From positions 186,001 to 250,000 of IMG/VR virus record IMGVR_UViG_3300050014_000823: a DNA stretch of 64,000 nucleotides; one strand, written 5' to 3'. Below the pieces are notes generated by a model. That model did not search any database. It worked only from the letters and a program-made list of their open reading frames with translations, and was not told the origin of the DNA. A program made the translations under genes and the position numbers. Below, piece after piece: positions 10,271-60,801 of this stretch (its first letter is position 1; each line of letters begins with the position of its first letter).

Positions 10271-12574
10271 CTAATAGCTTATGTTATAATATATGTATCG
10301 TTGATTATTATTGATGCTACTGATTTTTGCATTTTGCATCCAATATACTTTTTGTCCTTGCGTCCAAGGAGTATTTGTACCTGTTCCAGTATAATCAAGA
10401 CCCTGTACCAAGAAGTTAACTTGTGACTCACTTAAGTTCCACTGACCAGTTGTACCTGTTCCAAGTGGAAATGTTCCAGTATCACCTAATTGTTGAGTTC
10501 CACCAGTAACGGTATCACCAATATTGGTTATTTGAATATTCAATGAATAGTTTGTGAAATTCTTTCTATTGATAAACAAATAATTTATAAAACTATTCGA
10601 ACCAGTAATGCCTGTACAACCATTGATATAGAACGCATATTGTGAATAATTTAATGTTACACCCGATAAATTACCTGTCATATATATACAACCATTAAAA
10701 TCTGCAGAATATGTTCTATTAGTAAAATTAAAATCAGTTGCAATATTACTGGTTATTTTAGTACCATTTGCAAAAACTTGATACGGATTGGTCATTTTTA
10801 ACTGACCACCCAAATTAGTGCCGTCAATTCTTAAGTCAACATTATTAACATTCCATGCGCTTGTACTTCCAGACAATAATGAACAATTACTTAGTACAAT
10901 CTGATAAATTGTTGATGTACCTGTAAGCCAATTAGTCAAATCACCATGTAAATTTGGACAGTTGGTTGCATTAAAATTATAAACCTTACTTATATTCAAT
11001 TTTGATAAGTCTGAATAAAAATTATTATTGCTATATAAGGTTAGGTTGCTCATTTGATTATCAATAATAAAATTTGATAAATCACCAAATATTCCACCAA
11101 TATAACTGACATCAAATTGATTGATACTTTGTGTGTGAAAAACGCCAGCAGTTTTACCTGAATAATATGGTGTACTACTCAATGTAAATGTAACACCACT
11201 ATTACTATTCACACCCAATTGATATAATGTATTTGGTATTGTCATACCACTAACATCACCAGTTAAAAAATTTGTATCTAATGATAAGTATTGCAACTTG
11301 GGTGGAAGCACCAATAATTCTATGTTTCCCGTCACATACGTATTTCTAATTGTAATTGATGATGCGCTTAATGGTATTACAAAGGTACTGAGTGTTCCAT
11401 GCAATTTTGACCTTCCATAATAATTAAGAAAATTAATGCTCTGCATTTTTTCGTTGAAAACAAAATCGTTGATACTCATGTCGAGATTGTTCAACGCATA
11501 CATTGTCAAACTACTGAAATAGGTGAGACCACTATAATTCATGGGTATTGATGTTATGCCCGTACTGAAATATATTTGAAAATTTTGAAGTGTGCTTGGT
11601 AATGTCCATCCAGAAAGACTTCCAGAAAAATTGGAACTTGCAGGAAAATTATTTTGGTTGCCATATAACAAAAAATTACTAAGATGAGTATTACTAATGT
11701 CCCAATTTGATACATCGCCCCTTAAATATTGATTACTGTATAAATCAAACGAAGTCAATCCTGTATTAAACGTCCAACCACTTACATTACCAGTAATACC
11801 ATTTGAATTAAACAAATACCAATATATGTATTTTAACTTAGAAACATCCAAGGTCGTTGCATCGCCAGTAATTCCATAACATTCCTGTATGTATGAATAA
11901 ATTAAATTAGGACTATTGGTAATGATATCATTAAGACTTCCAGTTAGATAGCTATATAAATATGATAACACTAACCTTGTTAATTTAGTGAATCCATTAC
12001 CAAGATTTCCCGTGAAATGTGTATTAACCAATTCCAGGTCTTCGACATTATTAAGATTTGTAATTGTGTTAATATCACCCGACAAAGTATTATCAGCAAT
12101 ACGAAATGTACGAAGATTTTTAGGAAACACGCCATTAGTTATATCTTTATTAAAGGTTGTGTAATTGTAATAATTATTACCATTATAATTCAATATAACT
12201 GAATTCAAATTAGGAAATTGGTTCATGAATTTCAACAAATCACCAGCATAAGAATATCCATAATAAATATAATTATTGTATGGTTGAATTTTAGTAATTG
12301 CATCTAAATTACCTGAAAAATAAAAATTTTTATAACTACTTTCATTCGTTGCTTGCAATCCTTGATTCTGAAGACCATCATAATAAAATCTGTACTTCTG
12401 AGTACCCGCAGGTGTTTGATAATAAAAATTCACAGGATTACTCGGAGTCATACCTGTAAGTGTAAAACTCATTGAGTTACTATATAGCGAATTTAATCGT
12501 AAATACGAATCAACAATTTGTGCCTTAAACACACTGTCGCCATTTTTTAATATTCTACCGTCATTAATTAACAT
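10271..12574 (-). CDS. Leucine-rich-repeat protein, probable virion adhesin
   Basis: Many ~24-26-aa repeats of type LxxLxLxxxxxTGxIxx (e.g. LQYLSLDTNFLTGDVSG, LRTFRIADNTLSGDI); Asn/Ser/Thr-rich. Confidence 0.75.
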   Translation of the reverse strand: MLINDGRILKNGDSVFKAQIVDSYLRLNSLYSNSMSFTLTGMTPSNPVNFYYQTPAGTQKYRFYYDGLQNQGLQATNESSYKNFYFSGNLDAITKIQPYNNYIYYGYSYAGDLLKFMNQFPNLNSVILNYNGNNYYNYTTFNKDITNGVFPKNLRTFRIADNTLSGDINTITNLNNVEDLELVNTHFTGNLGNGFTKLTRLVLSYLYSYLTGSLNDIITNSPNLIYSYIQECYGITGDATTLDVSKLKYIYWYLFNSNGITGNVSGWTFNTGLTSFDLYSNQYLRGDVSNWDISNTHLSNFLLYGNQNNFPASSNFSGSLSGWTLPSTLQNFQIYFSTGITSIPMNYSGLTYFSSLTMYALNNLDMSINDFVFNEKMQSINFLNYYGRSKLHGTLSTFVIPLSASSITIRNTYVTGNIELLVLPPKLQYLSLDTNFLTGDVSGMTIPNTLYQLGVNSNSGVTFTLSSTPYYSGKTAGVFHTQSINQFDVSYIGGIFGDLSNFIIDNQMSNLTLYSNNNFYSDLSKLNISKVYNFNATNCPNLHGDLTNWLTGTSTIYQIVLSNCSLLSGSTSAWNVNNVDLRIDGTNLGGQLKMTNPYQVFANGTKITSNIATDFNFTNRTYSADFNGCIYMTGNLSGVTLNYSQYAFYINGCTGITGSNSFINYLFINRKNFTNYSLNIQITNIGDTVTGGTQQLGDTGTFPLGTGTTGQWNLSESQVNFLVQGLDYTGTGTNTPWTQGQKVYWMQNAKISSINNNQRYIYYNISY

Positions 12575-12582
12575 AGTATATT

Positions 12583-14772
12583 TTAATAAACAAATCCTTC
12601 AACTAATAAATGTGCGCAAAGTGGATTTACACTTGTTGAACAACATCCAACTCTGAAAAATATATCAACACCACAAGTATCTGGAACACCTTGATGTCTT
12701 GTACTTAAATCCAACTCATATGTTTCATTCGTCAAAACATCTGAAATTTGTTGTAAGTTAGCTAAATTATTCATTGAAAGGCTTGGGTCTCCCGGACAAC
12801 AGTTGTTACCAATGCTTACAGAGAAACATGTTGGAGAAGCATTACATAATATTATGAGTTTTGCACGGTTAAGTAATGCAACTTTGCCGGATGGTATACT
12901 AAATATTAAAGTATCTCCGACATTCTTCAAGTTAATATCTCTAACCACAATATAGTTTGGAACTGTAACACATGTTCCAACATCAGTTTGCATTATTGTT
13001 TGAGTGGGATATGCAAATTTCTGTCCAGTGTACAATATTTCGGATGTTGAACTAACCCATTCATTAATGATTGGAACTTGTTTAATTAATGTGCTTCCTG
13101 TGTCCCACACTAAACCTTGTGTTGCAGTTGCGCCATTTGGCACATGTACTACCGCCAAGCAAGCATCAAGTTTAACTGATTGATTTACAAAATCACCACA
13201 TATTAATGTGCAACTTGCACAGTTTGCAATGTGTAGTTTACTTGAACCAGTTTCATTATAACCAGCACATACACCAATCGCAATGTTATTACACCCACAT
13301 ATATTATTTTTAAGTGTCTGATTACCAATTCCAATATTAAAAGTACCACCAGTTATATATTTTAGTGATTGAGAACCAATTGCAATATTATCTATTCCAG
13401 AAACATTACATTGTAGTGCTTGTATACCAATTCCAATATTATCATAACCATCAACATTACATGTCATCGAATTTATACCAATTGCAATGTTTGAATCACC
13501 AATTGTATTTGCGCATAATGCTTGATATCCGAGAGCAATATTATAATTTGCAATAGTATTATTACCCAATGTATTAAAACCTAACCCAATATTGTATTGT
13601 CCACTAAGATTTTGTGTCATTGATGTTTGACCTAAAGCAATATTATTTCCTCCGCTTGTATTACTACAAAGCGATTGACAACCAATTCCAATGTTATTAG
13701 TACCACCAGTATTGAAATAAAGTGCTCTATATCCAATTCCAATATTATCATATCCTGTAGTATTATAAAAAAGTGATTGATAACCAACACCAATATTCTG
13801 ATAACCACTACTATTAGTACTAAGTGCAAATGAACCAAGTGCTACGTTACCAAATCCATTTATGTTACTATTAAGTGCAATTGTACCAACAGCAGTATTA
13901 TCATATCCACTAACGTTAGCACTAAGTGCTTCATATCCAAATGCGGTATTTTGACTACTTGTATTACTTTTAAGTGCAAATGAGCCAACAGCAGTATTAC
14001 TATTACCAATTATAACAGACATAAGAGCACATGCACCAATAGCTACGTTTCCCGTACCTGTTGTTGTATTAGTACCCGCAGATACACCAAAATAAGTATT
14101 ATCACATAAAGTACTACCGCTTATTGGTGTTCCACAACCTGCAACAGTTGAGCCATTAAGTGCATTAGACCAACCAATTCCACCACCAGTTGAACCTGTT
14201 GGTATGTGAGTATCCACATATTCTTTATCGACCAATGAACGATTTGTAAAGTCTGCACTATAATCTGTAACATATTCAATACCTGGGAAATTAACACCCG
14301 AAGCACCTGCTTTAATTGTGCCGCCACTAAATGACATATAACCACTAAAACTACAACCACCAAGTTTTCTTGATGCAAGTGATATATACGGACTTCCACC
14401 GGGGTTACCGTTAATGTATAATGTTGCTTCGCATCCACAGACGTTAGGTATATCGGTTGATATTGCAAGCGAATATGCATTAGTTCCTAAATCAAGAGAA
14501 GTATTTCCTGTTAATGTTCCACCTAATATGATATTTGCACCACTTGTACTTAAACCATTTGTACCACCTGTAATACTTCCACCGCCACCGCCAAGTGAAC
14601 ATATTGTCACAGTGTTAGCCTGACTTGTCATGACTATGCCTGTTCCTGCAGACAATGATTTAAATTGTAGGTTATTTCCGTTATTCTTACCGGAAAATAT
14701 CTGTGCACCACTACCTAGATTTTGACCTGTTGTTGTATTACCAACCAAATTTATATTTGACCTATTACCCAT
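12583..14772 (-). CDS. Tail-fibre/adhesin-like protein with a YadA/Hep-Hag-like beta-roll
   Basis: Long run of 14-aa NxAxGxxALxxNxxG repeats; TGGTNGL..LGGTLTGNT module. Confidence 0.75.
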   Translation of the reverse strand: MGNRSNINLVGNTTTGQNLGSGAQIFSGKNNGNNLQFKSLSAGTGIVMTSQANTVTICSLGGGGGSITGGTNGLSTSGANIILGGTLTGNTSLDLGTNAYSLAISTDIPNVCGCEATLYINGNPGGSPYISLASRKLGGCSFSGYMSFSGGTIKAGASGVNFPGIEYVTDYSADFTNRSLVDKEYVDTHIPTGSTGGGIGWSNALNGSTVAGCGTPISGSTLCDNTYFGVSAGTNTTTGTGNVAIGACALMSVIIGNSNTAVGSFALKSNTSSQNTAFGYEALSANVSGYDNTAVGTIALNSNINGFGNVALGSFALSTNSSGYQNIGVGYQSLFYNTTGYDNIGIGYRALYFNTGGTNNIGIGCQSLCSNTSGGNNIALGQTSMTQNLSGQYNIGLGFNTLGNNTIANYNIALGYQALCANTIGDSNIAIGINSMTCNVDGYDNIGIGIQALQCNVSGIDNIAIGSQSLKYITGGTFNIGIGNQTLKNNICGCNNIAIGVCAGYNETGSSKLHIANCASCTLICGDFVNQSVKLDACLAVVHVPNGATATQGLVWDTGSTLIKQVPIINEWVSSTSEILYTGQKFAYPTQTIMQTDVGTCVTVPNYIVVRDINLKNVGDTLIFSIPSGKVALLNRAKLIILCNASPTCFSVSIGNNCCPGDPSLSMNNLANLQQISDVLTNETYELDLSTRHQGVPDTCGVDIFFRVGCCSTSVNPLCAHLLVEGFVY

Positions 14773-14798
14773 TTTATTTTACTATTATATAAATACTA

Positions 14799-16901
14799 TT
14801 AAGATATTATTAAAATTTTAAATTCTTGACCATTTGCAGGTGGAGAATCGAATGTTACACAAACACAATTAGCGTTTGGTCTCTGTACGTTTGTGTAGAT
14901 TGTATCGTATGGACTACTACCTCTCACTACTTCAACTGCAACAAATTGTTTACCTTTGGCATGATTAATTGTAAATCCGGTTGCAGTGCTATTACCTGTA
15001 ATTGTAAATTCTGATAGTGATGAACCACCAGTTGCACCACTTACATATGGTACTTTATGAACTTGACATGTTCCAGAATCCCAAACCAATACACTATCAC
15101 TGCAAGTACCGTCTACAATATACCCAGATATATATGGTGAACCACAAAGTAGTACACAATTACCCTTTATCATCGAGATATTGTTGCAAGAATTAAGACT
15201 TAACTCTGCACAATTCATCATATTAACACAATATGCAGCAGATGGATAAGAAAGACACGTGTACATTGCATTTGCACCACATGTTGGTATTACGCATGTC
15301 ATTACGCTTGTAGTGTCAATATTAATTAACGGTGGGTCATTAAATGCCATTGGTTGACGTGCTGCACTTAAAATCACACGATTATATTCATGACAGCCAT
15401 CAAAAAGTAAACAACCACTATTACCCGATATATGAAACGAATATCCGTCAGTATTAGTAATATAAGTATTTCCAGTTAATGCGCCACCAAGAGCAATATT
15501 CTGACCAACTTTAGTAAGACCATTATTTGCTGTCGAAACACTTGTACCACCAGTAATCTGTGATATAACCCAACCCTTATTTACTAACGAACAATTGCTA
15601 AAATGAGCACTATAGTCTGCACAATATTCAATACCTGCAAAATTAGTCCATGTACCCTCAACACAAATAGCAGCAGCATTTTGGCAAATACATGTCTTAT
15701 CACCACAACCATTATCTGATAATAAAATAATTCCACCTGTTGAAAGATATATCTGACCTTGATTTAAATGATAACAAGTATATAAATTTATGCTTGGATT
15801 AGTAAGTTCAATACTACTACAATATTCTGTGGTTGGGGTATAATTGCATCTATATGTTTTTAATGTTAAATAACCTGCAGATTCACTAATACATCCGTAT
15901 TGCCTGCTACTATAGCCATCATCACCCAATTGAATTATCTTTGTTCCACCATAACAAGCATCTACACACAATTCAGCAGTATTGATACCATTATAGCCAG
16001 CATTATTAAATTTACTCCAAAGTCTACATTTATCCACACATAAAAAACGCTGATTACTATAATCATCATATCCATATAAAAATACCGATGGAGTTATAGT
16101 TAAGCCATTGTTACAACCAAGTGTTGAACCTGTTACAATGAAATTTCCAGCATCCGTATTAATTGAAGTGTTGCCTGTTAATGCACCACCAAGAACAACA
16201 ATTTTATCACTAAGAGTTAAACCGTTTGTTGCACCTGTAACATCACCGCCACCACCTTCAGGAACAGCAGTACTTAAAGCACCTAAACCATCTATATATA
16301 AAACACAAGTTGCTGTTGTTTTTGCAGGTAAACCATTAAAAGTAACCGCACTTGGGGTCATTTGTATACTCGTATAACATGCTGTGGAATAATTACAAGC
16401 ACTAAAATAGTTACAACCCTGTGAAGCACAAATCATTGCACCTATAGTTTCTGGAGTAGAAATAACACCGGATAAATATGCTTGTACTGAATCCACATAC
16501 ATTTCACCGCTATTATTACCATCATAATTAGATATATCAACATAATTATTAGCAACAGTAAAATAATTGTTACCAGAAGTATCGGTGAAACAAATGCAAC
16601 CACTATCAGTATTAATACCAGTATTACCTGTTAATGTTCCACCCAATATAATATTCTGTCCCGATTTGCTCAGACCATTTGTTGCACCAGTAATACCTGC
16701 AAAATTCTGCCAAGTAGCATTACCGTTTTCATCAGAAGCCAAGTACTTACCAAGACCTGCTTGTGGACATATGTGTAGTGTTGCACCACATTCAACAGTA
16801 AAATCACCATAAATTGCAGTACAACCCGATAAATAAAGTGAATCACCTGCTAACTGTTCAAACTTGCAATTACTTAGGTTGGGTTTTGTATCAATTGACA
16901 T
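14799..16901 (-). CDS. Cys-rich fibre-like virion protein
   Basis: Three NGL..LGGxLTGNT modules; N-terminal KPNLS..KFEQ..G..L.LSG motif shared with paralogs. Confidence 0.7.
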   Translation of the reverse strand: MSIDTKPNLSNCKFEQLAGDSLYLSGCTAIYGDFTVECGATLHICPQAGLGKYLASDENGNATWQNFAGITGATNGLSKSGQNIILGGTLTGNTGINTDSGCICFTDTSGNNYFTVANNYVDISNYDGNNSGEMYVDSVQAYLSGVISTPETIGAMICASQGCNYFSACNYSTACYTSIQMTPSAVTFNGLPAKTTATCVLYIDGLGALSTAVPEGGGGDVTGATNGLTLSDKIVVLGGALTGNTSINTDAGNFIVTGSTLGCNNGLTITPSVFLYGYDDYSNQRFLCVDKCRLWSKFNNAGYNGINTAELCVDACYGGTKIIQLGDDGYSSRQYGCISESAGYLTLKTYRCNYTPTTEYCSSIELTNPSINLYTCYHLNQGQIYLSTGGIILLSDNGCGDKTCICQNAAAICVEGTWTNFAGIEYCADYSAHFSNCSLVNKGWVISQITGGTSVSTANNGLTKVGQNIALGGALTGNTYITNTDGYSFHISGNSGCLLFDGCHEYNRVILSAARQPMAFNDPPLINIDTTSVMTCVIPTCGANAMYTCLSYPSAAYCVNMMNCAELSLNSCNNISMIKGNCVLLCGSPYISGYIVDGTCSDSVLVWDSGTCQVHKVPYVSGATGGSSLSEFTITGNSTATGFTINHAKGKQFVAVEVVRGSSPYDTIYTNVQRPNANCVCVTFDSPPANGQEFKILIIS

Positions 16902-17001
16902 AACTTCTTATCTTATTTAAGATAAATACTTAAAAACACAGACTTAATCCATTAGGCATAGAAAAAATAAAACCCACTGAAATTGTGAGTCTTAATTACA
17001 A

Positions 17002-17733
17002 TTAAAATGTTGGTGCTTGTGCGTCTAACCATGTGCACGTACCACCAATTTGAAAATCACTTGTGCTACCCGGAACACAACTTACTCCAACTATCTGTAT
17101 TTGACCACGTGAAAGACCACTGCCATTTACTGTACATGCAGATACCCCAACACAATAATCATCACCCAAACCTACAACAACATTATATTGACAATAACAA
17201 ACGCCAGTTCCAGGTGTTGCAAGTAAAGTAAATGGATTTGGATTGAAAATGTGTGAATCAGCATATGCACCACCCCAATCACCCGCATCTGCTTGAGCAG
17301 TCATGCCAAAGCATAAATTATAACAATCGCCAAGTTCTAATGGTGTACTTGGACACACATACGCACATATATAACAATAACATTGGTCACCAGAAGAAGT
17401 GCTACATATCTCAAAATTAATGTACTTAACCGTAGGCGGTAAAGTAGTTGTAGAGGTTGTCGTACTCGTAGTAGAAGTACTTGTTGTCGTAGTTGTCGGT
17501 GGTAAAGTAGTTGTAGTTGTTGTCGTAGTGGTAGTCGTTGTAGTAGTGGTAGTTGTTGGTGTATTCCAATTTCTGAAATTCAACATACTGTTGCAGCTTC
17601 CACCATAAGTAGGGTCAAAGCCACCACATGCAACAGCAGAATTCCTTGCAGCCAATAAATCATTTGACGGTGGAACTACTGCTGCGATAACATCAGTAAG
17701 GCAGAATGTCGTATTATTGGGTACACTTCCCAT
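17002..17733 (-). CDS. Thr-rich mucin-like, Cys-rich virion protein
   Basis: ~40-residue Thr/Ser/Pro tract between an N-terminal domain and a Cys-rich C-terminal domain. Confidence 0.7.
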   Translation of the reverse strand: MGSVPNNTTFCLTDVIAAVVPPSNDLLAARNSAVACGGFDPTYGGSCNSMLNFRNWNTPTTTTTTTTTTTTTTTTTLPPTTTTTSTSTTSTTTSTTTLPPTVKYINFEICSTSSGDQCYCYICAYVCPSTPLELGDCYNLCFGMTAQADAGDWGGAYADSHIFNPNPFTLLATPGTGVCYCQYNVVVGLGDDYCVGVSACTVNGSGLSRGQIQIVGVSCVPGSTSDFQIGGTCTWLDAQAPTF

Positions 17734-19685
17734 TATCCTAATCTATTTTCCAGTTCAGCAACTTTATTTTTTAAGTATGCAAGTTCCTTAAACACGAAGT
17801 CCATTTGTGCAATGGTTAACATACCATCAGCACCAACTCTCACTAACTCAGGATTTACTTTTTGTAGGTCTTGAGCAATAACACCATATCTAATTTGATT
17901 TGGCTCAGAAATTAACTCATATTGTTTATACTCGACATTAATTGGAGATATACTTATTGGTTCTATGCAAGTTTTTAACCTACAGTCAGAACTTAAAATA
18001 AAGTTTGATGCTGTTATTGTTGAACTTGCACATACTTGACCACACATACATATTAAGCCACTTGCACCACCGCTTACACCTGCACCAGATTTAATCATAA
18101 CATCACCACCAGCTTTAGGTGTTCCACCAATACCATCAACAGCATAGCCACCACAAATAAATATACTACCCCCCGCACCCGCATATCCTATTGCACCATA
18201 TCCAACTCCACCACAAATACACATTGTAGTTGCATCAGTAAAGGCAGTACCACCACCCTGTCCACATATTCTTGAACCTGAAGGTAATGTTAATGTGTTT
18301 GTTGTAAAAGCAAACCCATTACAAAATAGACCAGATGGACCAATGTAGTTGTTTGGTGCAATTATATAATTTGATGCACCTGCCCCTTTAGGAGTTATAA
18401 ATATGCTAATGTCGGTAGAAGTTCCTGCAGGACAAATATATGCATTACCAACACCCGCTTGTGTTGGACTTCCCATTATAAGATAGTTAGTACTACCATT
18501 CTTTGCTGCAATAAACACACAATTATTGTCAGCAGCCTGAATTGTCAAACAACCGTTATTACATAAAACATTACTCGTAAAAGTAGCCGTTGTATTGCAA
18601 ACATTATTTCCTGTTGCATTAAAAACAGTAAGGCGATTCGCAGTACCACTCATTGAAGATGTAGTGTTCGCTGTTACCCAACGTTTTACCCAATCAACAT
18701 CAGGAATACTGCGACAATTTGCATTAAATTTTGTACAATAATCAGCAGTATATAGCATACCAGAATTTCCTACGCCACCACCCACAGTAACATAAATTGC
18801 ATCAGGTCTAACAGTAAAATCATTTGAGCAAACACCGTTTGTTGAAGTAAATTGTGCCGTTCCACTTGCTGTTATAGAACCAGTCCACCCAAGTCCCGTT
18901 TGTACTCCACATCCCAAAAATCCACCACAACGAACACTCATGCTACCACAACAACTATTAAAGATTGAGCACATTGTCAAGTCATTTCCTGTTCCACTTG
19001 CATAAAGCAGTGCATGTCCGGTAATTGTACCACCAAGACAAACATTAGCACTATCATATTTACAAACACCATTTGTTGCGCCAGTTAAAGTACCGCTTCC
19101 ACCACTACCACCAGAAGTTATATAATATCCCGGATATGGAAGTACCCAACCCGTTGAAGTTGAAGTAGCAATTAATACAGATTTATCTATTTGTCCCGGT
19201 GTCGAAGGTTCAGTTGTTGTCAACAGACCTGCAACACTTGGACTTAAAAAGTACGTGCAATTCGCAACTAATCCCGTTAATCCTGTTACATATCCTGCTT
19301 GTGTCAAATCAAAGCAATTGGCATTATAACATTTGCTTACTATGCCTAAAACTTCGCCATTATATGCACCATTTGCTATTGGCTTACTATACACCCCACT
19401 ACCGAAGCCAATTACATCACCACAATTAAATCCATGTGATGTTTGATTTATTAATTTTGTAAGACTTTCACCTTTAGCAACTTCCCAAGTACCAATGCCT
19501 GAAGCATTTGATACCCATGCCTTTCCTTGCCCTGCACCATAAGAAGCACTAAATCCTGTTGGACCACAGATTTTTAATTGACCACAGATTACTGTCTGAC
19601 CAGATAAATGTATTGAATGACCGGGAAATTGGTCGAAGTGGCAATCGTCCCAATTTTGTTTTGTATCTAATTCTGCTGTTGACAT
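17733..19685 (-). CDS. Tail fibre/spike protein with a C-terminal intramolecular chaperone (peptidase S74-like)
   Basis: C-terminal SSDCRLKTCIEPI...YGVIAQDLQKVNPELV plus coiled coil; start moved to MSTAELDTK at 19685, below the late motif and terminator. Confidence 0.8.
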   Translation of the reverse strand: MSTAELDTKQNWDDCHFDQFPGHSIHLSGQTVICGQLKICGPTGFSASYGAGQGKAWVSNASGIGTWEVAKGESLTKLINQTSHGFNCGDVIGFGSGVYSKPIANGAYNGEVLGIVSKCYNANCFDLTQAGYVTGLTGLVANCTYFLSPSVAGLLTTTEPSTPGQIDKSVLIATSTSTGWVLPYPGYYITSGGSGGSGTLTGATNGVCKYDSANVCLGGTITGHALLYASGTGNDLTMCSIFNSCCGSMSVRCGGFLGCGVQTGLGWTGSITASGTAQFTSTNGVCSNDFTVRPDAIYVTVGGGVGNSGMLYTADYCTKFNANCRSIPDVDWVKRWVTANTTSSMSGTANRLTVFNATGNNVCNTTATFTSNVLCNNGCLTIQAADNNCVFIAAKNGSTNYLIMGSPTQAGVGNAYICPAGTSTDISIFITPKGAGASNYIIAPNNYIGPSGLFCNGFAFTTNTLTLPSGSRICGQGGGTAFTDATTMCICGGVGYGAIGYAGAGGSIFICGGYAVDGIGGTPKAGGDVMIKSGAGVSGGASGLICMCGQVCASSTITASNFILSSDCRLKTCIEPISISPINVEYKQYELISEPNQIRYGVIAQDLQKVNPELVRVGADGMLTIAQMDFVFKELAYLKNKVAELENRLG

Positions 19686-19721
19686 ATTAATATTTTCTAA
19701 TAAATACTTTAGAAAGGCAAT

Positions 19722-19749
19722 AAAAAAACCCATCGAATTCGATGGGTTT
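19722..19749 (-). terminator. Rho-independent terminator
   Basis: Perfect inverted repeat aaacccatcg-aatt-cgatgggttt with a U-tract on the minus strand. Confidence 0.8.
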
Positions 19750-19773
19750 CCTTAAAACTAAAAACTATGGCAA

Positions 19774-20685
19774 TTATTTCTGCTTGTTTACGGCTTCAAT
19801 AATCTTGTTTATGTCAAACAGGTTGACAGTATCATATGGGAAAGCCTGGATTTGCCCACTAATATCGAATTGCTCCAAGTATGAGAACTTGTTAAGTTCA
19901 TTTATATACTGTGCATTTGGAAGTACATTTATATGTTCCGGATAACCAAAAACTTCCGGCTTATTACCAATCCAAACAACGGTTGATTGCAGGTCGAGAG
20001 CTGCAGCGACATGTTGGCTGAAACTATCTATGAAAAGTCTCTTTGTACTCAAAGGAAACACCGCATATAATTCTCTATATGGCAAGTTAAGCATTTCTAC
20101 TCCTTGTAAAACAGGTTGCTCTGGGGACTTAATATGAAGTATACGGTAAGATTTACTGAAATAATTCACGAGTTTCTGTGCAATCTCAACTGGCATATCC
20201 CTAAACCAAGATTTCTTTGAGTATTGCCCCGTAGGACTGCCACCATGCGTTTGTAATAACATGATTGGTCTGTTATCAGGTTTAATCTTATCTCTCGCTA
20301 TTTCGAGTTCTCTGGGGTTTATATAGATTTTTGGTTTATAACCATCATAAGGAATTTTATACATATCACACCAACTTTGAGTCAAATGTTTTCTCTGTAG
20401 GATATGGTCTTCGGTGTGATAAACCTCTTGTCTGAATATTTTTGTTGTCGGTCTAATGAAATCTGCGAAAAAATATTGCATCTGACCAAAGGTATAAAAT
20501 CTGAATACATCTGGGTTGTAAAAGAACGGACCATCCCAAGCAGTTACAACAATTATTTTATAATCAGGGTATGCCTTTTTAATTGCACGAATAACTGCAA
20601 CACTCATAACTTGCTTACCATGACCACCTTCCGTATGAAAAATTATATATTTATCATCGTCTCTTATTTTATCATCTGTTACCAT
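19774..20685 (-). CDS. GT-B glycosyltransferase, GT9 (heptosyltransferase)-like
   Basis: GGHGKQVM...IRAIKKAYPDYKIIV N-terminal motif; C-terminal FIDSFSQHVAAAL...VVW...FGY typical of GT9. Confidence 0.7.
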   Translation of the reverse strand: MVTDDKIRDDDKYIIFHTEGGHGKQVMSVAVIRAIKKAYPDYKIIVVTAWDGPFFYNPDVFRFYTFGQMQYFFADFIRPTTKIFRQEVYHTEDHILQRKHLTQSWCDMYKIPYDGYKPKIYINPRELEIARDKIKPDNRPIMLLQTHGGSPTGQYSKKSWFRDMPVEIAQKLVNYFSKSYRILHIKSPEQPVLQGVEMLNLPYRELYAVFPLSTKRLFIDSFSQHVAAALDLQSTVVWIGNKPEVFGYPEHINVLPNAQYINELNKFSYLEQFDISGQIQAFPYDTVNLFDINKIIEAVNKQK

Positions 20686-20709
20686 AATTTTGAATTTTTA
20701 TATTAATTA

Positions 20710-21417
20710 TTATTTATATTCCCAACAAAAACCACCAGCGTGCTTTCTCTCTTTTTTTAAGCAATGATTTATATTTGGTTGAAAAATGCTTGTTATTGCC
20801 GATGCTTCCTTTTGACTTTTATATTCTTTAATAAAATCACCACTTTTAGATAATTGTATTATTGGTATGTTGTCTTTTTTTGTTTCTTTAAACACAAACG
20901 AATTTGCTTTTTCTTCGGACGAAAATAAATACGTGCTCCTATATGATTTTTTTCCTCTTTGGTCGATTACTTTTGAAATTATATCAGCACTAACACCATA
21001 TGTATTTGCAACTTCATTAACAGAATCATATCTTTTTAAAAATTTACCTTCTTCGGAATATTGATAAACAGGTTTTAAGTAAGTACAACCACCATCACCA
21101 CCATCAGTTAAATTTGTCAATTTAATTCCCTCATTTCTGTACTTTTGTATGTAATATCTTTCTAATCTTTCATGCTCACATATCTTCAATTTATTATTGT
21201 ATTCGTGCTCACATTCATCAAGTATTTTAATTTCCGGTTTTAATCCTAATGCAAGTATTTTATTAATGACATTATCTTTATGTGTGTTCTTTTCTCTTTT
21301 CTTACCATTCGTATTTAAATGCTCATGAAATCTTTTATTTAAGTCATTAGCAAATCCAACATAAAAAATACTGTCATTTCTTGGGTCAATCAATCCGTAA
21401 ATGTAAACAACTGCCAT
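20710..21417 (-). CDS. GIY-YIG homing endonuclease with NUMOD1-like DNA-binding repeats
   Basis: VYIYGLIDPRNDSIFYVG...R..EH...E...TNLTDGGDG; two PV.QY...G.F...Y.S..EA repeats. Confidence 0.85.
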   Translation of the reverse strand: MAVVYIYGLIDPRNDSIFYVGFANDLNKRFHEHLNTNGKKREKNTHKDNVINKILALGLKPEIKILDECEHEYNNKLKICEHERLERYYIQKYRNEGIKLTNLTDGGDGGCTYLKPVYQYSEEGKFLKRYDSVNEVANTYGVSADIISKVIDQRGKKSYRSTYLFSSEEKANSFVFKETKKDNIPIIQLSKSGDFIKEYKSQKEASAITSIFQPNINHCLKKERKHAGGFCWEYK

Positions 21418-21478
21418 ATTATAATTTTTTATACTTTTTTATAAATACGAGAAAAAATCAGAAAATCTATATTTATAT

Positions 21479-21515
21479 AAAAAAAAATGGAGAAAATTTC
21501 TTCTCTCCATTTTTT
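21479..21515. terminator. Bidirectional rho-independent terminator
   Basis: aaaaaatggaga...tctccatttttt. Confidence 0.7.
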
Positions 21516-21535
21516 GATATCGTAATTAACTATTA

Positions 21536-24500
21536 TTAGTTAACGAAAGCCAAACTGTACCATGCTGTTGATGCTGTGTCATACATTAATTCAAGTGCAC
21601 CAAAGTCAGTATTAATCAATCCAGTTGCTGAACCATCGATGTTATGACCGCCACCATTAACCGTGATATTGTTTACTAAGGCATTACCACTTATGTCTTT
21701 GATTTTGAATGCCTGTCCATTGATTGGTGTAGCAGGTAATGTAATTGTTGTTCCAGAAGTAGGATTAACCAACTGTACATATGTACTACCTGTTGTCAAC
21801 GTTGTTGAAACTGCAACAGTTGTCTTAGCATAAATGTTGTTCTTGTCACCAAGACTTGAACCTACAACAGTTTTAATTTCACCGGAAGTATTTCTTACAA
21901 GTACTGAATCACTTATAGTACCAGCATTTGGTATAGTAGCTAAACATGTTATACCACAAATTATAACATTTGTTGGATTTACTACTATACTATTTGTAGT
22001 GAAGCCATCAGTAGTTTTTATTTCTCCACATGAACTAAGTGCAGTAATATTTGTAACAGCATTAACATATTTTCCAATCATTTCAGCTTTACAAGTACCT
22101 GCATTTAAACATAAACTTGCAGAATAATCATTATTACATTTATATACACGAGAATAAACCGTATAACTATTAGGGTCAACACTCGTAAATGCTCTACAAG
22201 TTACAGAATTATCACCAATAAATAAGCTACTTGATGTAGATGTAATATTAGTATTTCCAGTTAAAGCACCACCAAGACTAACTATGCTACCTGCTTTGGT
22301 TAAACCGTTATTTGCAGTTATTGTTGTTAATCCTGTTAATGTAGCAACACTAAGTGTTCTAACTTCACCGCCTGTATTTCTTACAAGAAGAACATCAGAA
22401 GTTGCACCTGCTGTAGGCACAACACCAAGAGTTAATTTACCATTAATTGTTAATCCAGATGTACTGAAATCACCTTTAATAAGTGCATTAGTACCAGTAC
22501 CAATATAAAGTTGATTTGAACCAGCAGTTACTGCAGCACCAGCACCCTTACCAAGAATTATGTTATTACAGCCAGCCGAGATATTCAAACCAGCAGCACA
22601 ACCAATTGCAATGTTATCATTACCACTCGAAATATTCGCCAATGCATTTTGACCAATACCTAAGTTATTACTACCTGTAGTTACTATAGCACCACCCATA
22701 AGTGCTTGACAACCAATACCAATATTAAAAGCACCTGTACTAAGACAACTCATTATCTGTGTACCAATACCGATGTTTTGGCAACCAGTCATTAAACTAC
22801 TACCAAGTGCCAATACACTTCTACCAATAGCAATGTTACCACTTGCAGTTGGCTGTGCATAATATAGTGTTGAAAAACCAATAGCAAGGTTACATGTACC
22901 ACCACCAGAAGCAGGACCTGCAGCATAACCAATCCATGTGTTAGCATTACTTAATGTACTACCAGCAATTTTTAATATTGTTGAACCACTCTGCTGATAA
23001 CCAGCTTGAGTATTCAATTGTGCACCACCACAAACGTTAAGAGTAAATGCACCTGTTATACTTGTTGTACCTGTTAAAGCACCACCAAGTTTAACATTTG
23101 TTCCTTGTTTTGTTAAACCGTTATTTGCAGTTTGAATACCGCTTGTAGTAGTTTTACCAGTTACATAACCTGCGTCAACAAGTGAACGTGCTGTAAAACC
23201 TGCACAATAATTACCAGTATATTGAATACCAACCTGAGTAATACGTGAGTCTGTTATTACCAATGTTGGACTACCTACTCCAGATAATGTAAGTGTTGTT
23301 GCACCTGTTATTGTACCACCAAGTTTAACTTGTTGAGCTGCTCTTGTTAAACCATTTGTTGCTCCAGTTATAGCATTTGTTGCAGTTATTAAATCTGAAC
23401 AAGCAACCACAAGACATTCACCTGCGTTATATCCAACAGGAATTGCGGGAACTGCACCACAGTTTGCAGCACAAATACTAATAACACCCGCAGAATAACT
23501 TAAAGCAGTACCTGCAAGGTTAGGGTCAACACATAATCCAGTACCTGCTGTAGATAAACCACAACCTGTAGAACCACCGTTTCCTAAGTTAACACAAACT
23601 GTATGTACTCCACCAACCATTGAAATCGCAATACCTGCTCCTGCTTGAACATCAATGTTCGTTGCAAATAATGAGAAAGTTAATGAAGTTACACCTACTG
23701 TTATTGGGTTAAGTGTTGTTAATGCCCAAAGAGTATTATTTTGTGTTGAACCTGACGTTACCGGGATTAAGTTACCATTAGAAACTTCACCTGAAGGTGT
23801 TCCATCATAGTCAGTTGCACGTGTCCAAGTACTTGTTGAGGCACTATATATACCATTGGTTGAACCAGATGCTTGATTTTTAACAAGAATTCTGTCTCCA
23901 GTTACTGTTAAAACACCATCAATTGTTTGGTTACCGCTTAAAGTTATTGGACCTGTAGTTGCCAATCTTACTGCTCCGTGAACGTTAAGTCCAGTAGCAA
24001 TACTGTCAACATATTGTTTATCAACCAAAGAACGATTTGTATAGTTCAAACTATAATCAGATACATACACAATACCTGTTTGTGCAGCACCTGCTCTATT
24101 ATCGAAAATATTAAATCCTGAAGAACCATTAAAGTCAGCTAAGATACCAATAGCATTTGTTGTACCATTACCAATAGCACCACTACCAGATTCTGATTTG
24201 AACATTACTGTACCATTGCTTTGTCCAACAATAATTAAATCAGTTTCACCCGATGTTGCAAGTCTTAAGCCACAAAATCTTCCTAATGTCAATGTACGAT
24301 TACCATTATCAGATTCAATAATAGTATTTGCAACTAAAGCACCACCAAGGCAAACTTTTTGTCCTGTTGTACCAATACCATTTGTTGCTCCGGTTAATCC
24401 ACCAAGAGACGTAACTGATGTTGTACCAAGTACACCTGTTGAGGTATTAACACAAACTAAATTATTTGCACAACCAATAAGATTCTTTAATGCTACGGAT

Positions 24501-26122
24501 GAACCACCTAAGTTTACACCACCAGTTGCACCACTAATATTTATTTGATTTACGTTTTCACCTAAAACGAATGCACCTGTGATGCAAGTATTTCCTGTTA
24601 ATGCACCACCAAGAACAACTCTATTTCCAACCTTAGTTAAGCCATTATTTGCTAAAGATATGCCAGTACCACCTGTGATTAAATATTTAACCCAAGAAAC
24701 ATCTGGAATTGATTGTTCGGTTTGTGCAATGTATTGACAGAATGGTTGAGTATACTCAAGACCGTGGAAAAGTAATCCACATTCTGTTGCAACTGCAATT
24801 TTATCTTGAGATACTGATACTGATGTTAAACATCCGCTTGGTAATGCCTTTGAACTCAATACCACTGAACAGTTTCCTGGACACATTTTAATGCCAAGTG
24901 CTTCACCAACACCATCGATAAGATTCAGTTGTTTTGTATTAATATCAATTGTTGTTGCACCAGTTAATGTACCACCAAGTCTTATATTGTTACCTGCTTT
25001 TGTCAAACCGTTGTTTGCACTTATTGCAGTTGCACCAGTTATAGTTGCAACGCTTAAACATTTAACTCGTTTGTCAGTTGAATTCCAAACTAATACTGAA
25101 TCTGATGTTGTACCACCAGTTGGAGTTGTGAAAAGTTTAACACCACCAGTAAGTGAAACAGTACCAGCATTAAGTGAAACAACATTAGTAGCACCATCAA
25201 CACAAGCCAATGCTCCACCTGCTGATACTAAACCGATTCCATCTGTTGTTCCATCGATATACATTAATCCACTATTACATACTGACATAGAAATTTGATG
25301 TCCAGCAATATCAATACCATCGCTTACACATGCATATAATGATAAATTATTATTAGTAAATTTATAACATGCATTCGTATCTTCAAAACATAGTGAGTTA
25401 CCTGCTAATCCAATTGTTGTAGTACCAGTTAATGTACCACCAAGTTTAACATTTGTACCTTGCTTTGTTAAACCATTATTCGCAGTTTGAATACCAGAAG
25501 TAGTAGTTTTACCTGTTACCCAAGCAGCATCTGGAATTGAACGTGCTATAAAGCATGTGCTATAATCATTACCATACAATAAAGCATTTGTACCTAACAA
25601 TGTTGTTCTGCAACAGCCATTACAATTATAAAATTCTGAAAAAACACCATTATTTAATTGTGCGCAAACAATAACAGCACTATGACCCATACAACTATTT
25701 GCTGCAGCTACAACCATGTTACATGAACTTTCAGCAGGAGCACAACTTGTACCGACATATAATTTAGTTCCACTTGCTGTTGAGCAAGTGCCGTTTCCTG
25801 CCATAAAATATCTTAAAGCAACATCTGCAGGAATAGCAACGCAAGTATTGCCAGTTAAAATACCACCAAGTTTTACTTGTTGTGCTTGTTTTGTCAAACC
25901 GTTGGTTGCACCAGTTATTGCTGACCCTAATACACAAGCAGTTTTACCTGTTACATAAGCTGCATCAGCTAATGAACGTGCAGTAAACGTTGAACTTTGG
26001 TCTGAGGTATAACAGATTGTACCAACAGATGCAATCTTCGTATCACCCGATAATGTTAATGGAGTGCCATCTGTTTGCTCAAACTTAGCACAACTTAGAT
26101 TTAATTTTGTTGAAAATGCCAT
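21536..26122 (-). CDS. Long tail-fibre-like protein (1528 aa)
   Basis: Eight NGLT..LGG.LTG modules, an LSGNQTIDGV..GDRILVKNQ..NGIY fibre domain and NxAxG beta-roll repeats. Confidence 0.8.
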   Translation of the reverse strand: MAFSTKLNLSCAKFEQTDGTPLTLSGDTKIASVGTICYTSDQSSTFTARSLADAAYVTGKTACVLGSAITGATNGLTKQAQQVKLGGILTGNTCVAIPADVALRYFMAGNGTCSTASGTKLYVGTSCAPAESSCNMVVAAANSCMGHSAVIVCAQLNNGVFSEFYNCNGCCRTTLLGTNALLYGNDYSTCFIARSIPDAAWVTGKTTTSGIQTANNGLTKQGTNVKLGGTLTGTTTIGLAGNSLCFEDTNACYKFTNNNLSLYACVSDGIDIAGHQISMSVCNSGLMYIDGTTDGIGLVSAGGALACVDGATNVVSLNAGTVSLTGGVKLFTTPTGGTTSDSVLVWNSTDKRVKCLSVATITGATAISANNGLTKAGNNIRLGGTLTGATTIDINTKQLNLIDGVGEALGIKMCPGNCSVVLSSKALPSGCLTSVSVSQDKIAVATECGLLFHGLEYTQPFCQYIAQTEQSIPDVSWVKYLITGGTGISLANNGLTKVGNRVVLGGALTGNTCITGAFVLGENVNQINISGATGGVNLGGSSVALKNLIGCANNLVCVNTSTGVLGTTSVTSLGGLTGATNGIGTTGQKVCLGGALVANTIIESDNGNRTLTLGRFCGLRLATSGETDLIIVGQSNGTVMFKSESGSGAIGNGTTNAIGILADFNGSSGFNIFDNRAGAAQTGIVYVSDYSLNYTNRSLVDKQYVDSIATGLNVHGAVRLATTGPITLSGNQTIDGVLTVTGDRILVKNQASGSTNGIYSASTSTWTRATDYDGTPSGEVSNGNLIPVTSGSTQNNTLWALTTLNPITVGVTSLTFSLFATNIDVQAGAGIAISMVGGVHTVCVNLGNGGSTGCGLSTAGTGLCVDPNLAGTALSYSAGVISICAANCGAVPAIPVGYNAGECLVVACSDLITATNAITGATNGLTRAAQQVKLGGTITGATTLTLSGVGSPTLVITDSRITQVGIQYTGNYCAGFTARSLVDAGYVTGKTTTSGIQTANNGLTKQGTNVKLGGALTGTTSITGAFTLNVCGGAQLNTQAGYQQSGSTILKIAGSTLSNANTWIGYAAGPASGGGTCNLAIGFSTLYYAQPTASGNIAIGRSVLALGSSLMTGCQNIGIGTQIMSCLSTGAFNIGIGCQALMGGAIVTTGSNNLGIGQNALANISSGNDNIAIGCAAGLNISAGCNNIILGKGAGAAVTAGSNQLYIGTGTNALIKGDFSTSGLTINGKLTLGVVPTAGATSDVLLVRNTGGEVRTLSVATLTGLTTITANNGLTKAGSIVSLGGALTGNTNITSTSSSLFIGDNSVTCRAFTSVDPNSYTVYSRVYKCNNDYSASLCLNAGTCKAEMIGKYVNAVTNITALSSCGEIKTTDGFTTNSIVVNPTNVIICGITCLATIPNAGTISDSVLVRNTSGEIKTVVGSSLGDKNNIYAKTTVAVSTTLTTGSTYVQLVNPTSGTTITLPATPINGQAFKIKDISGNALVNNITVNGGGHNIDGSATGLINTDFGALELMYDTASTAWYSLAFVN

Positions 26123-26188
26123 AATTTCGTATTTTTATGTTATTTATAAATAGTTAAAAAGCCGATAAGTCTTTGCATTATGTTAAAT

Positions 26189-26944: not shown

Positions 26945-26955
26945 ATCTGTATTTT

Positions 26956-28857: not shown

Positions 28858-28869
28858 ATCTATTGTTTT

Positions 28870-30735: not shown

Positions 30736-30740
30736 ATCTT

Positions 30741-51126: not shown

Positions 51127-51139
51127 CTATATGAAATTA

Positions 51140-51322: not shown

Positions 51323-51405
51323 AGTACTTATAATTATTTCATATAAATACTATGTTTTGTTAGAAAATAATTATTTTGGGAGTATCGTAGATGTGTATTT
51401 GAAAT

Positions 51406-52219: not shown

Positions 52220-52239
52220 ACATAAATTTTAAATTATAT

Positions 52240-59398: not shown

Positions 59399-59408
59399 AA
59401 TTAATTTA

Positions 59409-60062: not shown

Positions 60063-60071
60063 CTTACTAAT

Positions 60072-60800: not shown

Positions 60801-60801
60801 A

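What the first reader, a model, noticed from the sequence alone, without database searches (positions are those of the whole stretch)
17002..20685. GT9-like transferase embedded among fibre genes next to a mucin-like Thr-tract protein: possible virion glycosylation
A GT9/heptosyltransferase-like gene lies within the structural cluster, about 32 kb from the donor-synthesis genes. It is two genes from a protein carrying PTTTTTTTTTTTTTTTTTLPPTTTTTSTSTTSTTTSTTTLPP. The tract uses mixed ACN codons, so it is maintained at the protein level rather than by slippage. Established: bacterial TibC/Aah enzymes use ADP-heptose to O-heptosylate adhesins. Inference: this phage glycosylates its Ser/Thr-rich fibres.
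Basis: inference. Interest (0 to 1): 0.62.

Follow-up and report, generated by a model that had tools for sequence, protein, structure and literature searches.

The report
Phage-only GT9-like sugar transferase among fibre genes
A large peat-soil phage carries, in the middle of its tail-fibre genes, a strongly conserved sugar-transferring enzyme from a virus-only offshoot of the heptosyltransferase family; it may decorate the virion's fibres, but comparison with related phages gives no support for a specific link to the neighbouring threonine-rich protein.

Summary
Gene 19774-20685(-) encodes a 303-aa protein that Pfam misses. Its AlphaFold model (pLDDT 95) matches GT9 enzymes (WaaF, WaaC, TibC; Z 19-23) well above other GT-B families (Z ~11), and hhalign to E. 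coli GT9 gives 97.4% probability. The Thr tract (17 consecutive Thr, mixed codons) and the HldD/HldE-like genes 32-35 kb away are real.

The enzyme belongs to an uncharacterised family seen so far only in viruses. That family keeps the GT9 donor-site motif but replaces the catalytic Asp (WaaC D13, TibC D110) with Lys (GGxGK, 19 of 19 lineages), and it lacks every TibC-specific module.

It forms its own terminator-bounded unit with a homing endonuclease. It is under strong purifying selection: rank 1 of 147 orthologues against one relative, with synonymous sites saturated. Three complete relatives lack it.

Long Ser/Thr tracts do not track the enzyme or the hld genes. The hld genes occur only in genomes that carry the enzyme (9 of 16 against 0 of 4).

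In other phage lineages homologues sit beside fibre genes, often with sulfotransferases, APS kinase and 2OG oxygenases. Glycosylation of virion fibres is the best guess (~0.4). Modification of the host envelope is a serious rival (~0.3).

The parts
19774..20685 (-). P0003, 303-aa GT9-like GT-B glycosyltransferase of a family seen only in viruses so far (signature GGxGK / SWxRDxP / IDSFxQHxAAA)
   Evidence: No Pfam hit. 673 clusters at 50% identity.
20710..21417 (-). GIY-YIG/NUMOD homing endonuclease, same terminator-bounded unit as the transferase
   Evidence: Present upstream of the transferase in many but not all related loci.
21482..21515 (-). Intrinsic-terminator hairpin after the 1528-aa fibre-like gene. 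It closes the unit upstream of the endonuclease and transferase.
   Evidence: Free energy -17.2 kcal/mol, z -5.1.
19721..19754 (-). Intrinsic-terminator hairpin plus U-run directly after the transferase stop. It overlaps the listed ATG of the next gene.
   Evidence: Free energy -20.9 kcal/mol, z -6.4.
17733..19733 (-). P0002, tail fibre with a C-terminal Peptidase_S74 intramolecular chaperone. The real start is probably the in-frame ATG at 19685.
17002..17733 (-). P0001: a 56-aa N-terminal adaptor, a Thr/Ser/Pro linker and a Cys-rich C-terminal domain. It is translationally coupled to P0002 by a TAATG overlap.
   Evidence: No homologue of the C-domain was found.
17431..17559 (-). Thr-rich tract (residues 59-101) with mixed ACN codons
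16968..16994 (-). Terminator-like hairpin after P0001
   Evidence: Free energy -10 kcal/mol, z -3.4.
10271..31865 (-). Cluster of large fibre-like or virion-surface genes (host-recognition cluster) in which the transferase is embedded
   Evidence: Mosaic and variable in relatives.
52868..53785 (-). HldD, ADP-glyceromanno-heptose 6-epimerase
   Evidence: above the curated cut-off. Closest cellular relatives are 50-56% identical and almost all Bacteroidota.
53782..54210 (-). HldE domain II-like heptose-1-phosphate adenylyltransferase
   Evidence: Present in 8 of 16 transferase-bearing relatives and 0 of 4 without.
55639..56427 (-). HldE domain I-like (PfkB) heptose-7-phosphate kinase
56424..63979 (-). 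Rest of the sugar cluster: WecB 2-epimerase, two methyltransferases, two GT2 genes and a GT2_5+GT4 fusion
   Evidence: The GT2_5 domain is conserved in all 13 relatives tested.

Best explanation
P0003 is a soluble, catalytically active GT-B glycosyltransferase. It belongs to an offshoot of family GT9 that has so far been seen only in viruses.

Shown:
- It has the GT9 fold and the GT9 donor-site motif.
- Lys replaces the GT9 catalytic Asp throughout the family.
- It is transcribed as its own terminator-bounded unit inside the tail-fibre (host-recognition) cluster.
- It is under very strong purifying selection.
- Homologues in many phage lineages lie next to fibre genes.

Inferred:
- In the cytoplasm of the infected cell (probably a Bacteroidota host) it transfers a nucleotide-activated sugar onto a phage-made virion surface protein of the fibre cluster, before or during assembly.
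- In this phage the sugar is most likely ADP-heptose. It would be made by the phage's HldE-like kinase and adenylyltransferase, with or without HldD, from host precursors.
- The Thr-rich linker of the neighbouring adaptor protein is one possible acceptor. It is not a required one, because the enzyme is retained in relatives without such tracts.
For: Fold and homology. The donor motif D220-S221-x3-H225-xAAA aligns with WaaC D261...H266..AA.

Virus-only so far: the nearest ESM Atlas clusters are 100% viral. In 401 Bacteroidota genomes the best hit scores only 74 bits, and the best-scoring cellular ORFs inspected keep the canonical Gly-Asp.

Placement among fibre genes. It is the fixed anchor between variable fibre genes in about 48 related loci. 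It lies directly after the tail-fibre gene in Pelagibacter phage HTVC112P. A Gly- and Ser/Thr-rich large ORF lies within 3 genes in 10 of 17 lineages, against 1-4% for random genes in three related genomes.

Neighbours in other lineages are modification enzymes and fibre domains: sulfotransferases, APS kinase, 2OG-Fe(II) oxygenases, GT25, GT2, methyl- and acetyltransferases; collagen, Mtd_N, Peptidase_S74, BppL_N. Fusions to GT25 and FkbM methyltransferase also occur.

Selection: rank 1 of 147 orthologues against G002 (88% identity, median 57%, major capsid protein 80%), with pS 0.78 and pN 0.098. Rank 27 of 154 against G007.

No membrane features: maximum hydropathy 0.86 and family median pI 6.6. 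The genome has no lipid-carrier initiating transferase and no Wzx flippase.

Donor: it is the only GT9-like gene in the genome. The hld genes are nested within transferase-bearing genomes, 9 of 16 against 0 of 4.

Precedents: TibC heptosylates a protein in the cytoplasm and uses ADP-D,D-heptose (PMC4358343). Mycobacteriophage virions are glycosylated (Freeman 2023, cited as ref 80 in PMC12582341).
Against: - No direct evidence identifies any acceptor.
- Fibre adjacency is also what is expected for receptor-masking genes.
- The lineages are not independent. Many are T4-like, and this phage has a gp23-like capsid protein.
- Such high conservation fits a conserved acceptor better than hypervariable fibres do.
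- Three complete relatives lack the gene, so it is dispensable.
- Ser/Thr tracts track neither the enzyme nor the hld genes.
- 7 of 16 transferase-bearing genomes have no hld gene (four of the seven are fragments, 47-75% complete).
- The loss of the catalytic Asp leaves both activity and donor uncertain.
- The hld nestedness has p about 0.07, uncorrected for phylogeny.
- No hld genes lie near homologues in other lineages.
Confidence: 0.4

Rival explanations
1. Host-envelope modification. The enzyme adds a sugar to a host glycolipid or polysaccharide (LPS inner core, O-chain or capsule precursor) at the inner face of the membrane. This masks the receptor and prevents superinfection or loss of progeny on debris.
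For: The archetypal GT9 acceptor is the LPS inner core. Receptor-modifying genes commonly sit beside receptor-binding genes (own knowledge: T5 llp, P22/Sf6 O-antigen modifiers). The literature reads glycosyltransferases and rfaE inside the fibre 'host recognition cluster' of pelagimyophages this way (PMC7029224). A conserved host core structure would explain the extreme sequence conservation. The N-domain of this protein is mildly basic, pI 8.85. Likely hosts have the heptose pathway.
Against: The family has so far been seen only in viruses and has lost the Asp that all four E. coli LPS heptosyltransferases and the best cellular hits keep. Family median pI is 6.6, whereas three of the four E. 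coli enzymes have strongly basic N-domains. The phage has no flippase or lipid-carrier genes. Neighbours such as 2OG oxygenases next to collagen-like fibres look like protein-modifying enzymes.
Confidence: 0.3
2. The first reader's narrow model, which is a special case of the best explanation: P0003 uses phage-made ADP-L,D-heptose to O-heptosylate the Thr tract of P0001 and the other Thr-linker proteins, TibC-style.
For: The tract is real and maintained at protein level. Three proteins in this genome carry such linkers. P0001 is probably a virion-attached adaptor protein. The HldD/HldE genes are present. Pro/Thr linkers are O-glycosylated in several bacteria (own knowledge).
Against: Poly-Thr runs occur only in this phage among 13 relatives. 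G007 has the largest Ser/Thr tracts without HldD, 45 kb from its transferase. G006 has HldD but no tracts. A P0001 homologue lies near the transferase in only 4 of about 48 loci. All TibC-specific modules and the catalytic Asp are missing. TibC/Aah modify Ser in beta-helix repeats, not mucin-like tracts (PMC4358343).
Confidence: 0.12
3. The enzyme acts on another phage or host molecule, for example it glycosylates modified phage DNA.
For: T4 DNA glucosyltransferases are also GT-B (own knowledge). The Gly-rich loop plus Lys could bind phosphate (inference). A thymidylate-synthase-family gene is present.
Against: No GT9-like DNA transferase is known. The thymidylate-synthase hit scores like an ordinary ThyA, 285 bits. 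The gene sits among fibre genes, not with nucleotide metabolism. Three complete relatives lack it.
Confidence: 0.05
4. A non-catalytic role, for example a fibre assembly factor or structural protein with a GT9-like fold, like the GT9-like subunits of the chloroplast NDH complex.
For: GT9-like folds without known enzyme activity exist in NDH-PSI structures, Z about 18. The catalytic Asp is lost.
Against: The donor-binding motif and other pocket residues are more than 90% conserved across 74 diverse members. Fusions to GT25 and FkbM methyltransferase, and sugar-modifying neighbours, point to glycan chemistry.
Confidence: 0.05

Closest known systems
GT9 LPS heptosyltransferases (WaaC, WaaF, WaaQ; Pfam PF01075)
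   Same: GT-B fold, with GT9 structures as best matches (Z 19-23). Profile homology 97.4%. The C-terminal Asp...His..Ala-Ala donor motif is kept, as is the Trp of the Lys-x-Trp motif.
   Different: No match to PF01075. The catalytic Asp is replaced by Lys in a GGxGK loop. An Arg-Asp pair (SWxRDxP) occupies the region of WaaC's Lys-x-Trp motif; the Lys that aligns with K192 is not conserved in the family. The protein is shorter (303 aa). The family has been seen only in viruses so far, and its acceptor is unknown.
BAHT protein O-heptosyltransferases (TibC, Aah)
   Same: GT9-type catalytic core (Z about 20). A cytoplasmic enzyme that could act on a surface adhesin-like protein. An ADP-heptose donor is plausible (PMC4358343).
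   Different: It lacks the N-terminal beta-barrel and the four-Cys iron finger (it has one Cys), and Asp110 is not conserved. A beta-hairpin thumb and dodecamer formation were not examined. There is no autotransporter substrate.
Glycosyltransferases in the tail-fibre 'host recognition cluster' of pelagi- and cyanomyophages (PMC7029224)
   Same: Glycosyltransferases and rfaE-type genes are embedded among hypervariable fibre genes of T4-like phages. This phage also has a gp23-like capsid protein.
   Different: That work highlights GT8 and proposes O-chain modification. This particular family was not singled out, and no function was tested in either case.
Mycobacteriophage virion glycosylation (Freeman et al. 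2023, cited in PMC12582341)
   Same: Phage-encoded glycosyltransferases decorate virion proteins.
   Different: Different host phylum. From my own recollection of that paper, which I could not read here, the enzyme families and the modified proteins (capsid and tail tube) also differ. Glycosylation was shown there and is only inferred here.

Membership tests
GT9 (Pfam PF01075 / CAZy GT9) | Match to the PF01075 model above its gathering score | tested here: not met
   No hit for P0003 or anywhere in the genome at E<=10. 6 of 74 family members give weak hits. One fusion protein reaches 22.9 bits against the 22-bit cut-off.
GT9 (Pfam PF01075 / CAZy GT9) | GT-B fold closest to solved GT9 structures; profile-level homology | tested here: met
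   Foldseek E 2.7e-13. Z 19-23 against about 11 for other GT-B families. hhalign probability 97.4%, E 1.3e-11.
GT9 (Pfam PF01075 / CAZy GT9) | Catalytic Asp after strand 1 (WaaC D13, TibC D110) | tested here: not met
   It aligns with K24. Lys is found in 93% of 74 members and in 19 of 19 lineages. Cellular relatives keep Gly-Asp.
GT9 (Pfam PF01075 / CAZy GT9) | C-terminal donor-binding motif (WaaC D261, H266, A269, A270) | tested here: met
   D220, S221 and H225 are each at least 95% conserved, and the Ala run is 73-81% conserved.
GT9 (Pfam PF01075 / CAZy GT9) | Uses ADP-heptose as donor | not testable with these tools
   Indirect only: the hld genes are nested within transferase-bearing genomes.
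BAHT (TibC/Aah) | N-terminal beta-barrel (TibC residues 1-97) | tested here: not met
   The model aligns to TibC residues 96-387 only. P0003 starts at the catalytic domain.
BAHT (TibC/Aah) | Four-Cys iron-finger motif | tested here: not met
   P0003 has a single Cys. The feature is as defined in PMC4358343.
BAHT (TibC/Aah) | Dodecamer assembly and an autotransporter beta-helix substrate | not tested
ADP-L-glycero-beta-D-manno-heptose pathway (GmhA, HldE, GmhB, HldD) | All four steps encoded | tested here: not met
   HldD is above cut-off. The HldE domain I- and II-like genes are best hits but below cut-off. No SIS isomerase was found. Only a 10.9-bit HAD hit was found. The missing steps would have to come from the host.
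Phage virion glycosylation system | Glycan demonstrated on virion proteins | not testable with these tools
   Needs virions and mass spectrometry.

The most novel reading that the evidence does not exclude
A family derived from GT9 and seen only in viruses (at least 673 clusters at 50% identity), with Lys in place of the catalytic Asp, is the core of a widespread virion-fibre decoration system. In phages of aquatic and soil Gram-negative bacteria it would glycosylate, and with its neighbours sulfate, hydroxylate and methylate, tail fibres. That would make the receptor-binding surface partly carbohydrate and change how host range and immune or defence recognition of these phages are understood.
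Probability: 0.3. Interest if true: 0.75.

Novelty: new variant of a known kind. Interest (0 to 1): 0.5.

Why it matters
Post-translational glycosylation of phage virions has, to my knowledge, been shown experimentally only in mycobacteriophages. If this family decorates fibres, then part of host recognition in many environmental phages, including abundant marine pelagiphages, would depend on glycans that genome-based host-range prediction cannot see.

Whatever the acceptor turns out to be, the family is a clear biochemical target. It is a GT9 fold that has swapped its catalytic base for Lys, and where present it can be more conserved than the major capsid protein. Two cultured phages (HTVC111P and HTVC112P) carry it.

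Tried and rejected
- Pfam, NCBIfam and phmmer-against-PDB searches with P0003 alone gave nothing usable. Megablast of the region against phages found no match.
- The search for related loci with the 74-member alignment failed for lack of a conserved stretch. With P0216 it found nothing. A degenerate motif scan replaced these.
- Contigs encoding diverse representatives were short and unannotated. A look-up of one window GT2 found no record. Cluster members carried no taxon names.
- The P0001 C-domain search found no homologue in the allowed length range. This says nothing about longer proteins.
- No HldE or HldD homologues lie in the flanks of other lineages.
- The reversed-pattern control of the WSN scan is uninformative, because the pattern equals its own reverse complement. 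Many of its hits are other reading frames. Only the G000, G007, G008 and G003 tracts were accepted, after translation or by reading the matched bases.
- 'Transferase present in all 13 relatives' is circular, because those genomes were found with the transferase as query. This was corrected with capsid-selected genomes.
- I considered recent transfer or homing-endonuclease gene conversion as the cause of the high conservation. I rejected it because synonymous sites are saturated.
- Presence/absence profiling against three transferase-free genomes gave 22 co-distributed ORFs. These are too few genomes, and too divergent, to name a partner.
- The Freeman 2023 paper is not held.
- Read laying was not used. 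No alternative genetic code was used.


Full report
**Setting**

The window is bases 186001-250000 of a 299-kb viral contig that CheckV rates 91% complete. It comes from peat metagenomes. The phage has a T4 gp23-like major capsid protein. GC content is about 35%. The closest cellular relatives of its HldD are 50-56% identical and almost all Bacteroidota, so a Bacteroidota host is likely; this is an inference.

Nearly all genes in the window lie on the minus strand. A DNA polymerase and a helicase occupy 2.3-8.2 kb. A run of large fibre-like genes follows, from about 10.3 to 31.9 kb. A sugar-metabolism cluster occupies 52.9-64 kb.

**Checking the observation**

- The 303-aa ORF at 19774-20685 is followed by a 666-aa fibre with a Peptidase_S74 chaperone domain.
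- Next comes a 243-aa ORF whose residues 59-101 form the Thr-rich tract.
- The 17 consecutive Thr codons use all four ACN codons. Tandem Repeats Finder sees only imperfect 18- and 36-nt periodicity. The tract is therefore maintained as protein, not as a slippery repeat.
- HldD passes its curated NCBIfam cut-off. An adenylyltransferase and a PfkB kinase are best matched by the two HldE domains.
- GmhA and GmhB were not found, so the pathway is incomplete and depends on the host.

**What the transferase is**

Sequence libraries do not recognise it. An exhaustive profile-free search found 673 clusters at 50% identity. An AlphaFold2 model built on 74 diverse members is confident, at pLDDT 95 and pTM 0.93.

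All top PDB matches are GT9 enzymes: Veillonella GT9, WaaF, WaaC and TibC. Their Z-scores are 19-23, against about 11 for the next GT-B families. A profile-profile comparison with the four E. coli GT9 enzymes gives 97.4% probability over 227 columns. 'GT9-like' is therefore correct at the level of fold and remote homology.

**How it differs from GT9 and from TibC**

The alignment keeps the C-terminal donor motif: D220, S221, H225 and the Ala run match WaaC D261, H266, A269 and A270. It also keeps the Trp of the Lys-x-Trp motif.

The invariant Gly-Asp that carries the catalytic base (WaaC D13, TibC D110) aligns with Gly-Lys. GGxGK is present in 19 of 19 lineages of the family, including the pelagiphage homologue.

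In a sample of 401 Bacteroidota genomes the best hit reaches only 74 bits. The top-scoring cellular ORFs that I inspected keep Gly-Asp, and the three best sit next to GT4-like genes. The nearest ESM Atlas clusters are 100% viral.

The protein has one Cys and no N-terminal extension. It therefore lacks the beta-barrel and iron finger that define the TibC/Aah family (PMC4358343). I file it as a GT9-derived family known only from viruses so far, not as a member of GT9 proper or of BAHT.

What the Lys does is unknown. A Gly-rich loop followed by Lys at a helix start usually contacts phosphate; this is an inference.

**Local organisation**

Strong hairpins followed by U-runs lie after the 1528-aa gene (-17.2 kcal/mol, z -5.1) and directly after the transferase stop (-20.9 kcal/mol, z -6.4). 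A weaker hairpin lies after the Thr-tract gene.

The GIY-YIG endonuclease and the transferase therefore form one unit. The fibre and the Thr-tract gene form the next unit, and their stop and start overlap as TAATG. The transferase is embedded among fibre genes but is not coupled to them.

**Comparative genomics within the clade**

In about 48 related loci the transferase (69-100% identity) is a fixed anchor between fibre genes that are mosaic and only 31-70% identical.

Conservation is high where the gene is present:
- Against genome G002 it is the most conserved of 147 reciprocal best hits. It is 88% identical, against a median of 57% and 80% for the capsid protein.
- Against G007 it ranks 27 of 154.
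- Synonymous sites are saturated (pS 0.78) while pN is 0.098. The conservation therefore reflects purifying selection, not recent transfer through the neighbouring homing endonuclease.

The gene is not universal. Among seven capsid-selected large relatives that the transferase search had not already brought in, six of them complete, three complete genomes have it (59-66% identity). Three complete genomes and one 79%-complete genome lack it.

- Runs of 10 or more Thr occur only in this phage among 13 transferase-bearing genomes.
- Mixed Ser/Thr tracts are large in G007, which has no HldD. They lie in four proteins about 45 kb from its transferase. Tracts are also present in G008 (HldD present), small in G003, and absent in several complete genomes, including G006 (HldD present).
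- A homologue of the Thr-tract protein lies near the transferase in only 4 of about 48 loci.
- In contrast, hld-type genes (kinase, adenylyltransferase or epimerase) occur in 9 of 16 transferase-bearing genomes and in none of the 4 without it. The hypergeometric p is about 0.07, uncorrected for relatedness.

This nested pattern is what is expected if the transferase consumes phage-made ADP-heptose. Genomes with HldE-like genes but no HldD could still supply ADP-D,D-heptose, which is the form TibC uses (PMC4358343).

The donor part of the hypothesis therefore gains modest support. The Thr-tract part gains none.

**Other phage lineages**

A motif scan plus an HMM recovered 143 homologues in 30 clusters at 60% identity.

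- A Gly- and Ser/Thr-rich large ORF lies within three genes in 10 of 17 lineages, against 1-4% of genes in three related genomes.
- In Pelagibacter phage HTVC112P the homologue directly follows the annotated tail-fibre gene.
- In a T4-like clade it sits between fibres with collagen, Mtd_N and Peptidase_S74 domains and the neck genes. Its neighbours there are a GT2/methyltransferase, a sulfotransferase and an APS-kinase or nucleotidyltransferase gene.
- Over 75 neighbours from 15 lineages, the commonest Pfam families are sulfotransferases, APS kinase, an ice-binding-like beta-roll and 2OG-Fe(II) oxygenases.
- Fusions to GT25 and to FkbM methyltransferase exist.

The family therefore belongs to glycan-building and modification cassettes placed beside fibre genes.

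**The Thr-tract protein**

Its first 56 residues are 46-50% identical to small proteins of Cellulophaga phages. In phi17:1, the context I examined, that gene follows a tail gene with the same one-base overlap. In relatives the same module is fused to different C-terminal parts. One is a beta-helix-like domain with no Ser/Thr linker.

I read it as a fibre-docking adaptor that carries a variable distal domain, with the Thr tract as a flexible linker. Two further proteins of this phage, outside the window, use the same kind of linker between Cys-rich modules. The C-terminal domain has no detectable relatives in the length range searched.

**Mechanism and rivals**

The best-supported reading is a cytoplasmic transferase that decorates a virion surface protein, probably with heptose. 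My confidence is about 0.4.

The main rival is modification of a host envelope glycan to mask the receptor, at about 0.3. This is how the literature reads glycosyltransferases in fibre clusters of marine T4-like phages (PMC7029224). It would also explain the extreme conservation, through a conserved acceptor. Against it stand:
- the virus-only distribution seen so far;
- the lost Asp;
- the near-neutral pI of the family;
- the absence of flippase and lipid-carrier genes;
- protein-modifying neighbours.

DNA modification and a non-catalytic role are minor possibilities.

**Novelty and limits**

Glycosyltransferases among fibre genes have been described, and virion glycosylation is known in mycobacteriophages (ref 80 in PMC12582341; the paper itself is not held). 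What is new here:
- the definition of a large, uncharacterised GT9-derived family seen only in viruses so far, with a Lys at the catalytic position;
- its unusual degree of conservation;
- its recurrent pairing with sulfation and hydroxylation genes.

Nothing here identifies the acceptor. The lineages are not independent, the co-occurrence tests are small, and the complex prediction could not be run.

Noticed in passing
window 19685-19754: The first ATG of the fibre ORF (19733) lies inside the 3' arm of the terminator hairpin that follows the transferase. The real start is probably the in-frame ATG 16 codons downstream, at 19685.
   Followed up: partly
window 17002-17733 (L071:12953-13684): The public JGI gene call splits the Thr-tract ORF. 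It calls a 118-aa C-terminal gene and a 62-aa antisense ORF over the tract. The conserved N-terminal module in frame with the tract argues for the full 243-aa protein.
   Followed up: yes
window 20710-21417, 31878-32594, 54491-55642: The window holds three free-standing homing endonuclease genes: one GIY-YIG and two HNH. The last sits between the HldE-like kinase and adenylyltransferase genes, so the two HldE activities are encoded as separate genes with a mobile element between them.
   Followed up: partly
G000:C1:153723-156263 and 163015-165867 (outside the window): Two further large proteins (846 and 950 aa) use poly-Thr/Pro linkers between Cys-rich modules of about 110-140 aa. The 950-aa protein also has four or five Ig/FN3-like repeats. 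Such long pure Thr runs were not seen in 12 related genomes.
   Followed up: partly
window 17563-17733; L003:4998-5435; L045:13694-15187; L015:13058-14767: A 56-aa N-terminal module (phrog_21885) is shared with Cellulophaga phages. In phi17:1 and in several related loci its gene starts 1 nt inside the stop of a tail or fibre gene. It is fused to very different C-terminal domains, which suggests a portable fibre-docking adaptor.
   Followed up: partly
L064:8606-12960, L057:8064-12617, L062:4735-7754: In T4-like lineages the GT9-like gene lies in cassettes with sulfotransferases, APS kinase or nucleotidyltransferase fusions, GT2/methyltransferase and 2OG-Fe(II) oxygenases, next to collagen-like fibres and upstream of the neck genes. 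This suggests sulfated or hydroxylated fibre decoration.
   Followed up: partly
window 62504-63979: The N-terminal GT2_5 domain (residues 1-175) of this 491-aa protein is conserved at 49-61% identity in all 13 relatives tested, but with different or no C-terminal fusions. It is a second widely kept glycosyltransferase of the clade.
   Followed up: no
G000:C1:292202-293875 and 284351-285403: There is a T4 gp23-like major capsid protein (E 2e-21 to solved T4-type capsid proteins) and a thymidylate-synthase-family gene (285 bits). The phage is a distant T4-like jumbo myovirus from peat.
   Followed up: partly
window 50335-52881, 57452-58219, 59409-60800: Six ORFs in and beside the sugar cluster (213-263 aa) have no Pfam or NCBIfam match. 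They might supply the missing isomerase and phosphatase steps or further glycan chemistry.
   Followed up: no
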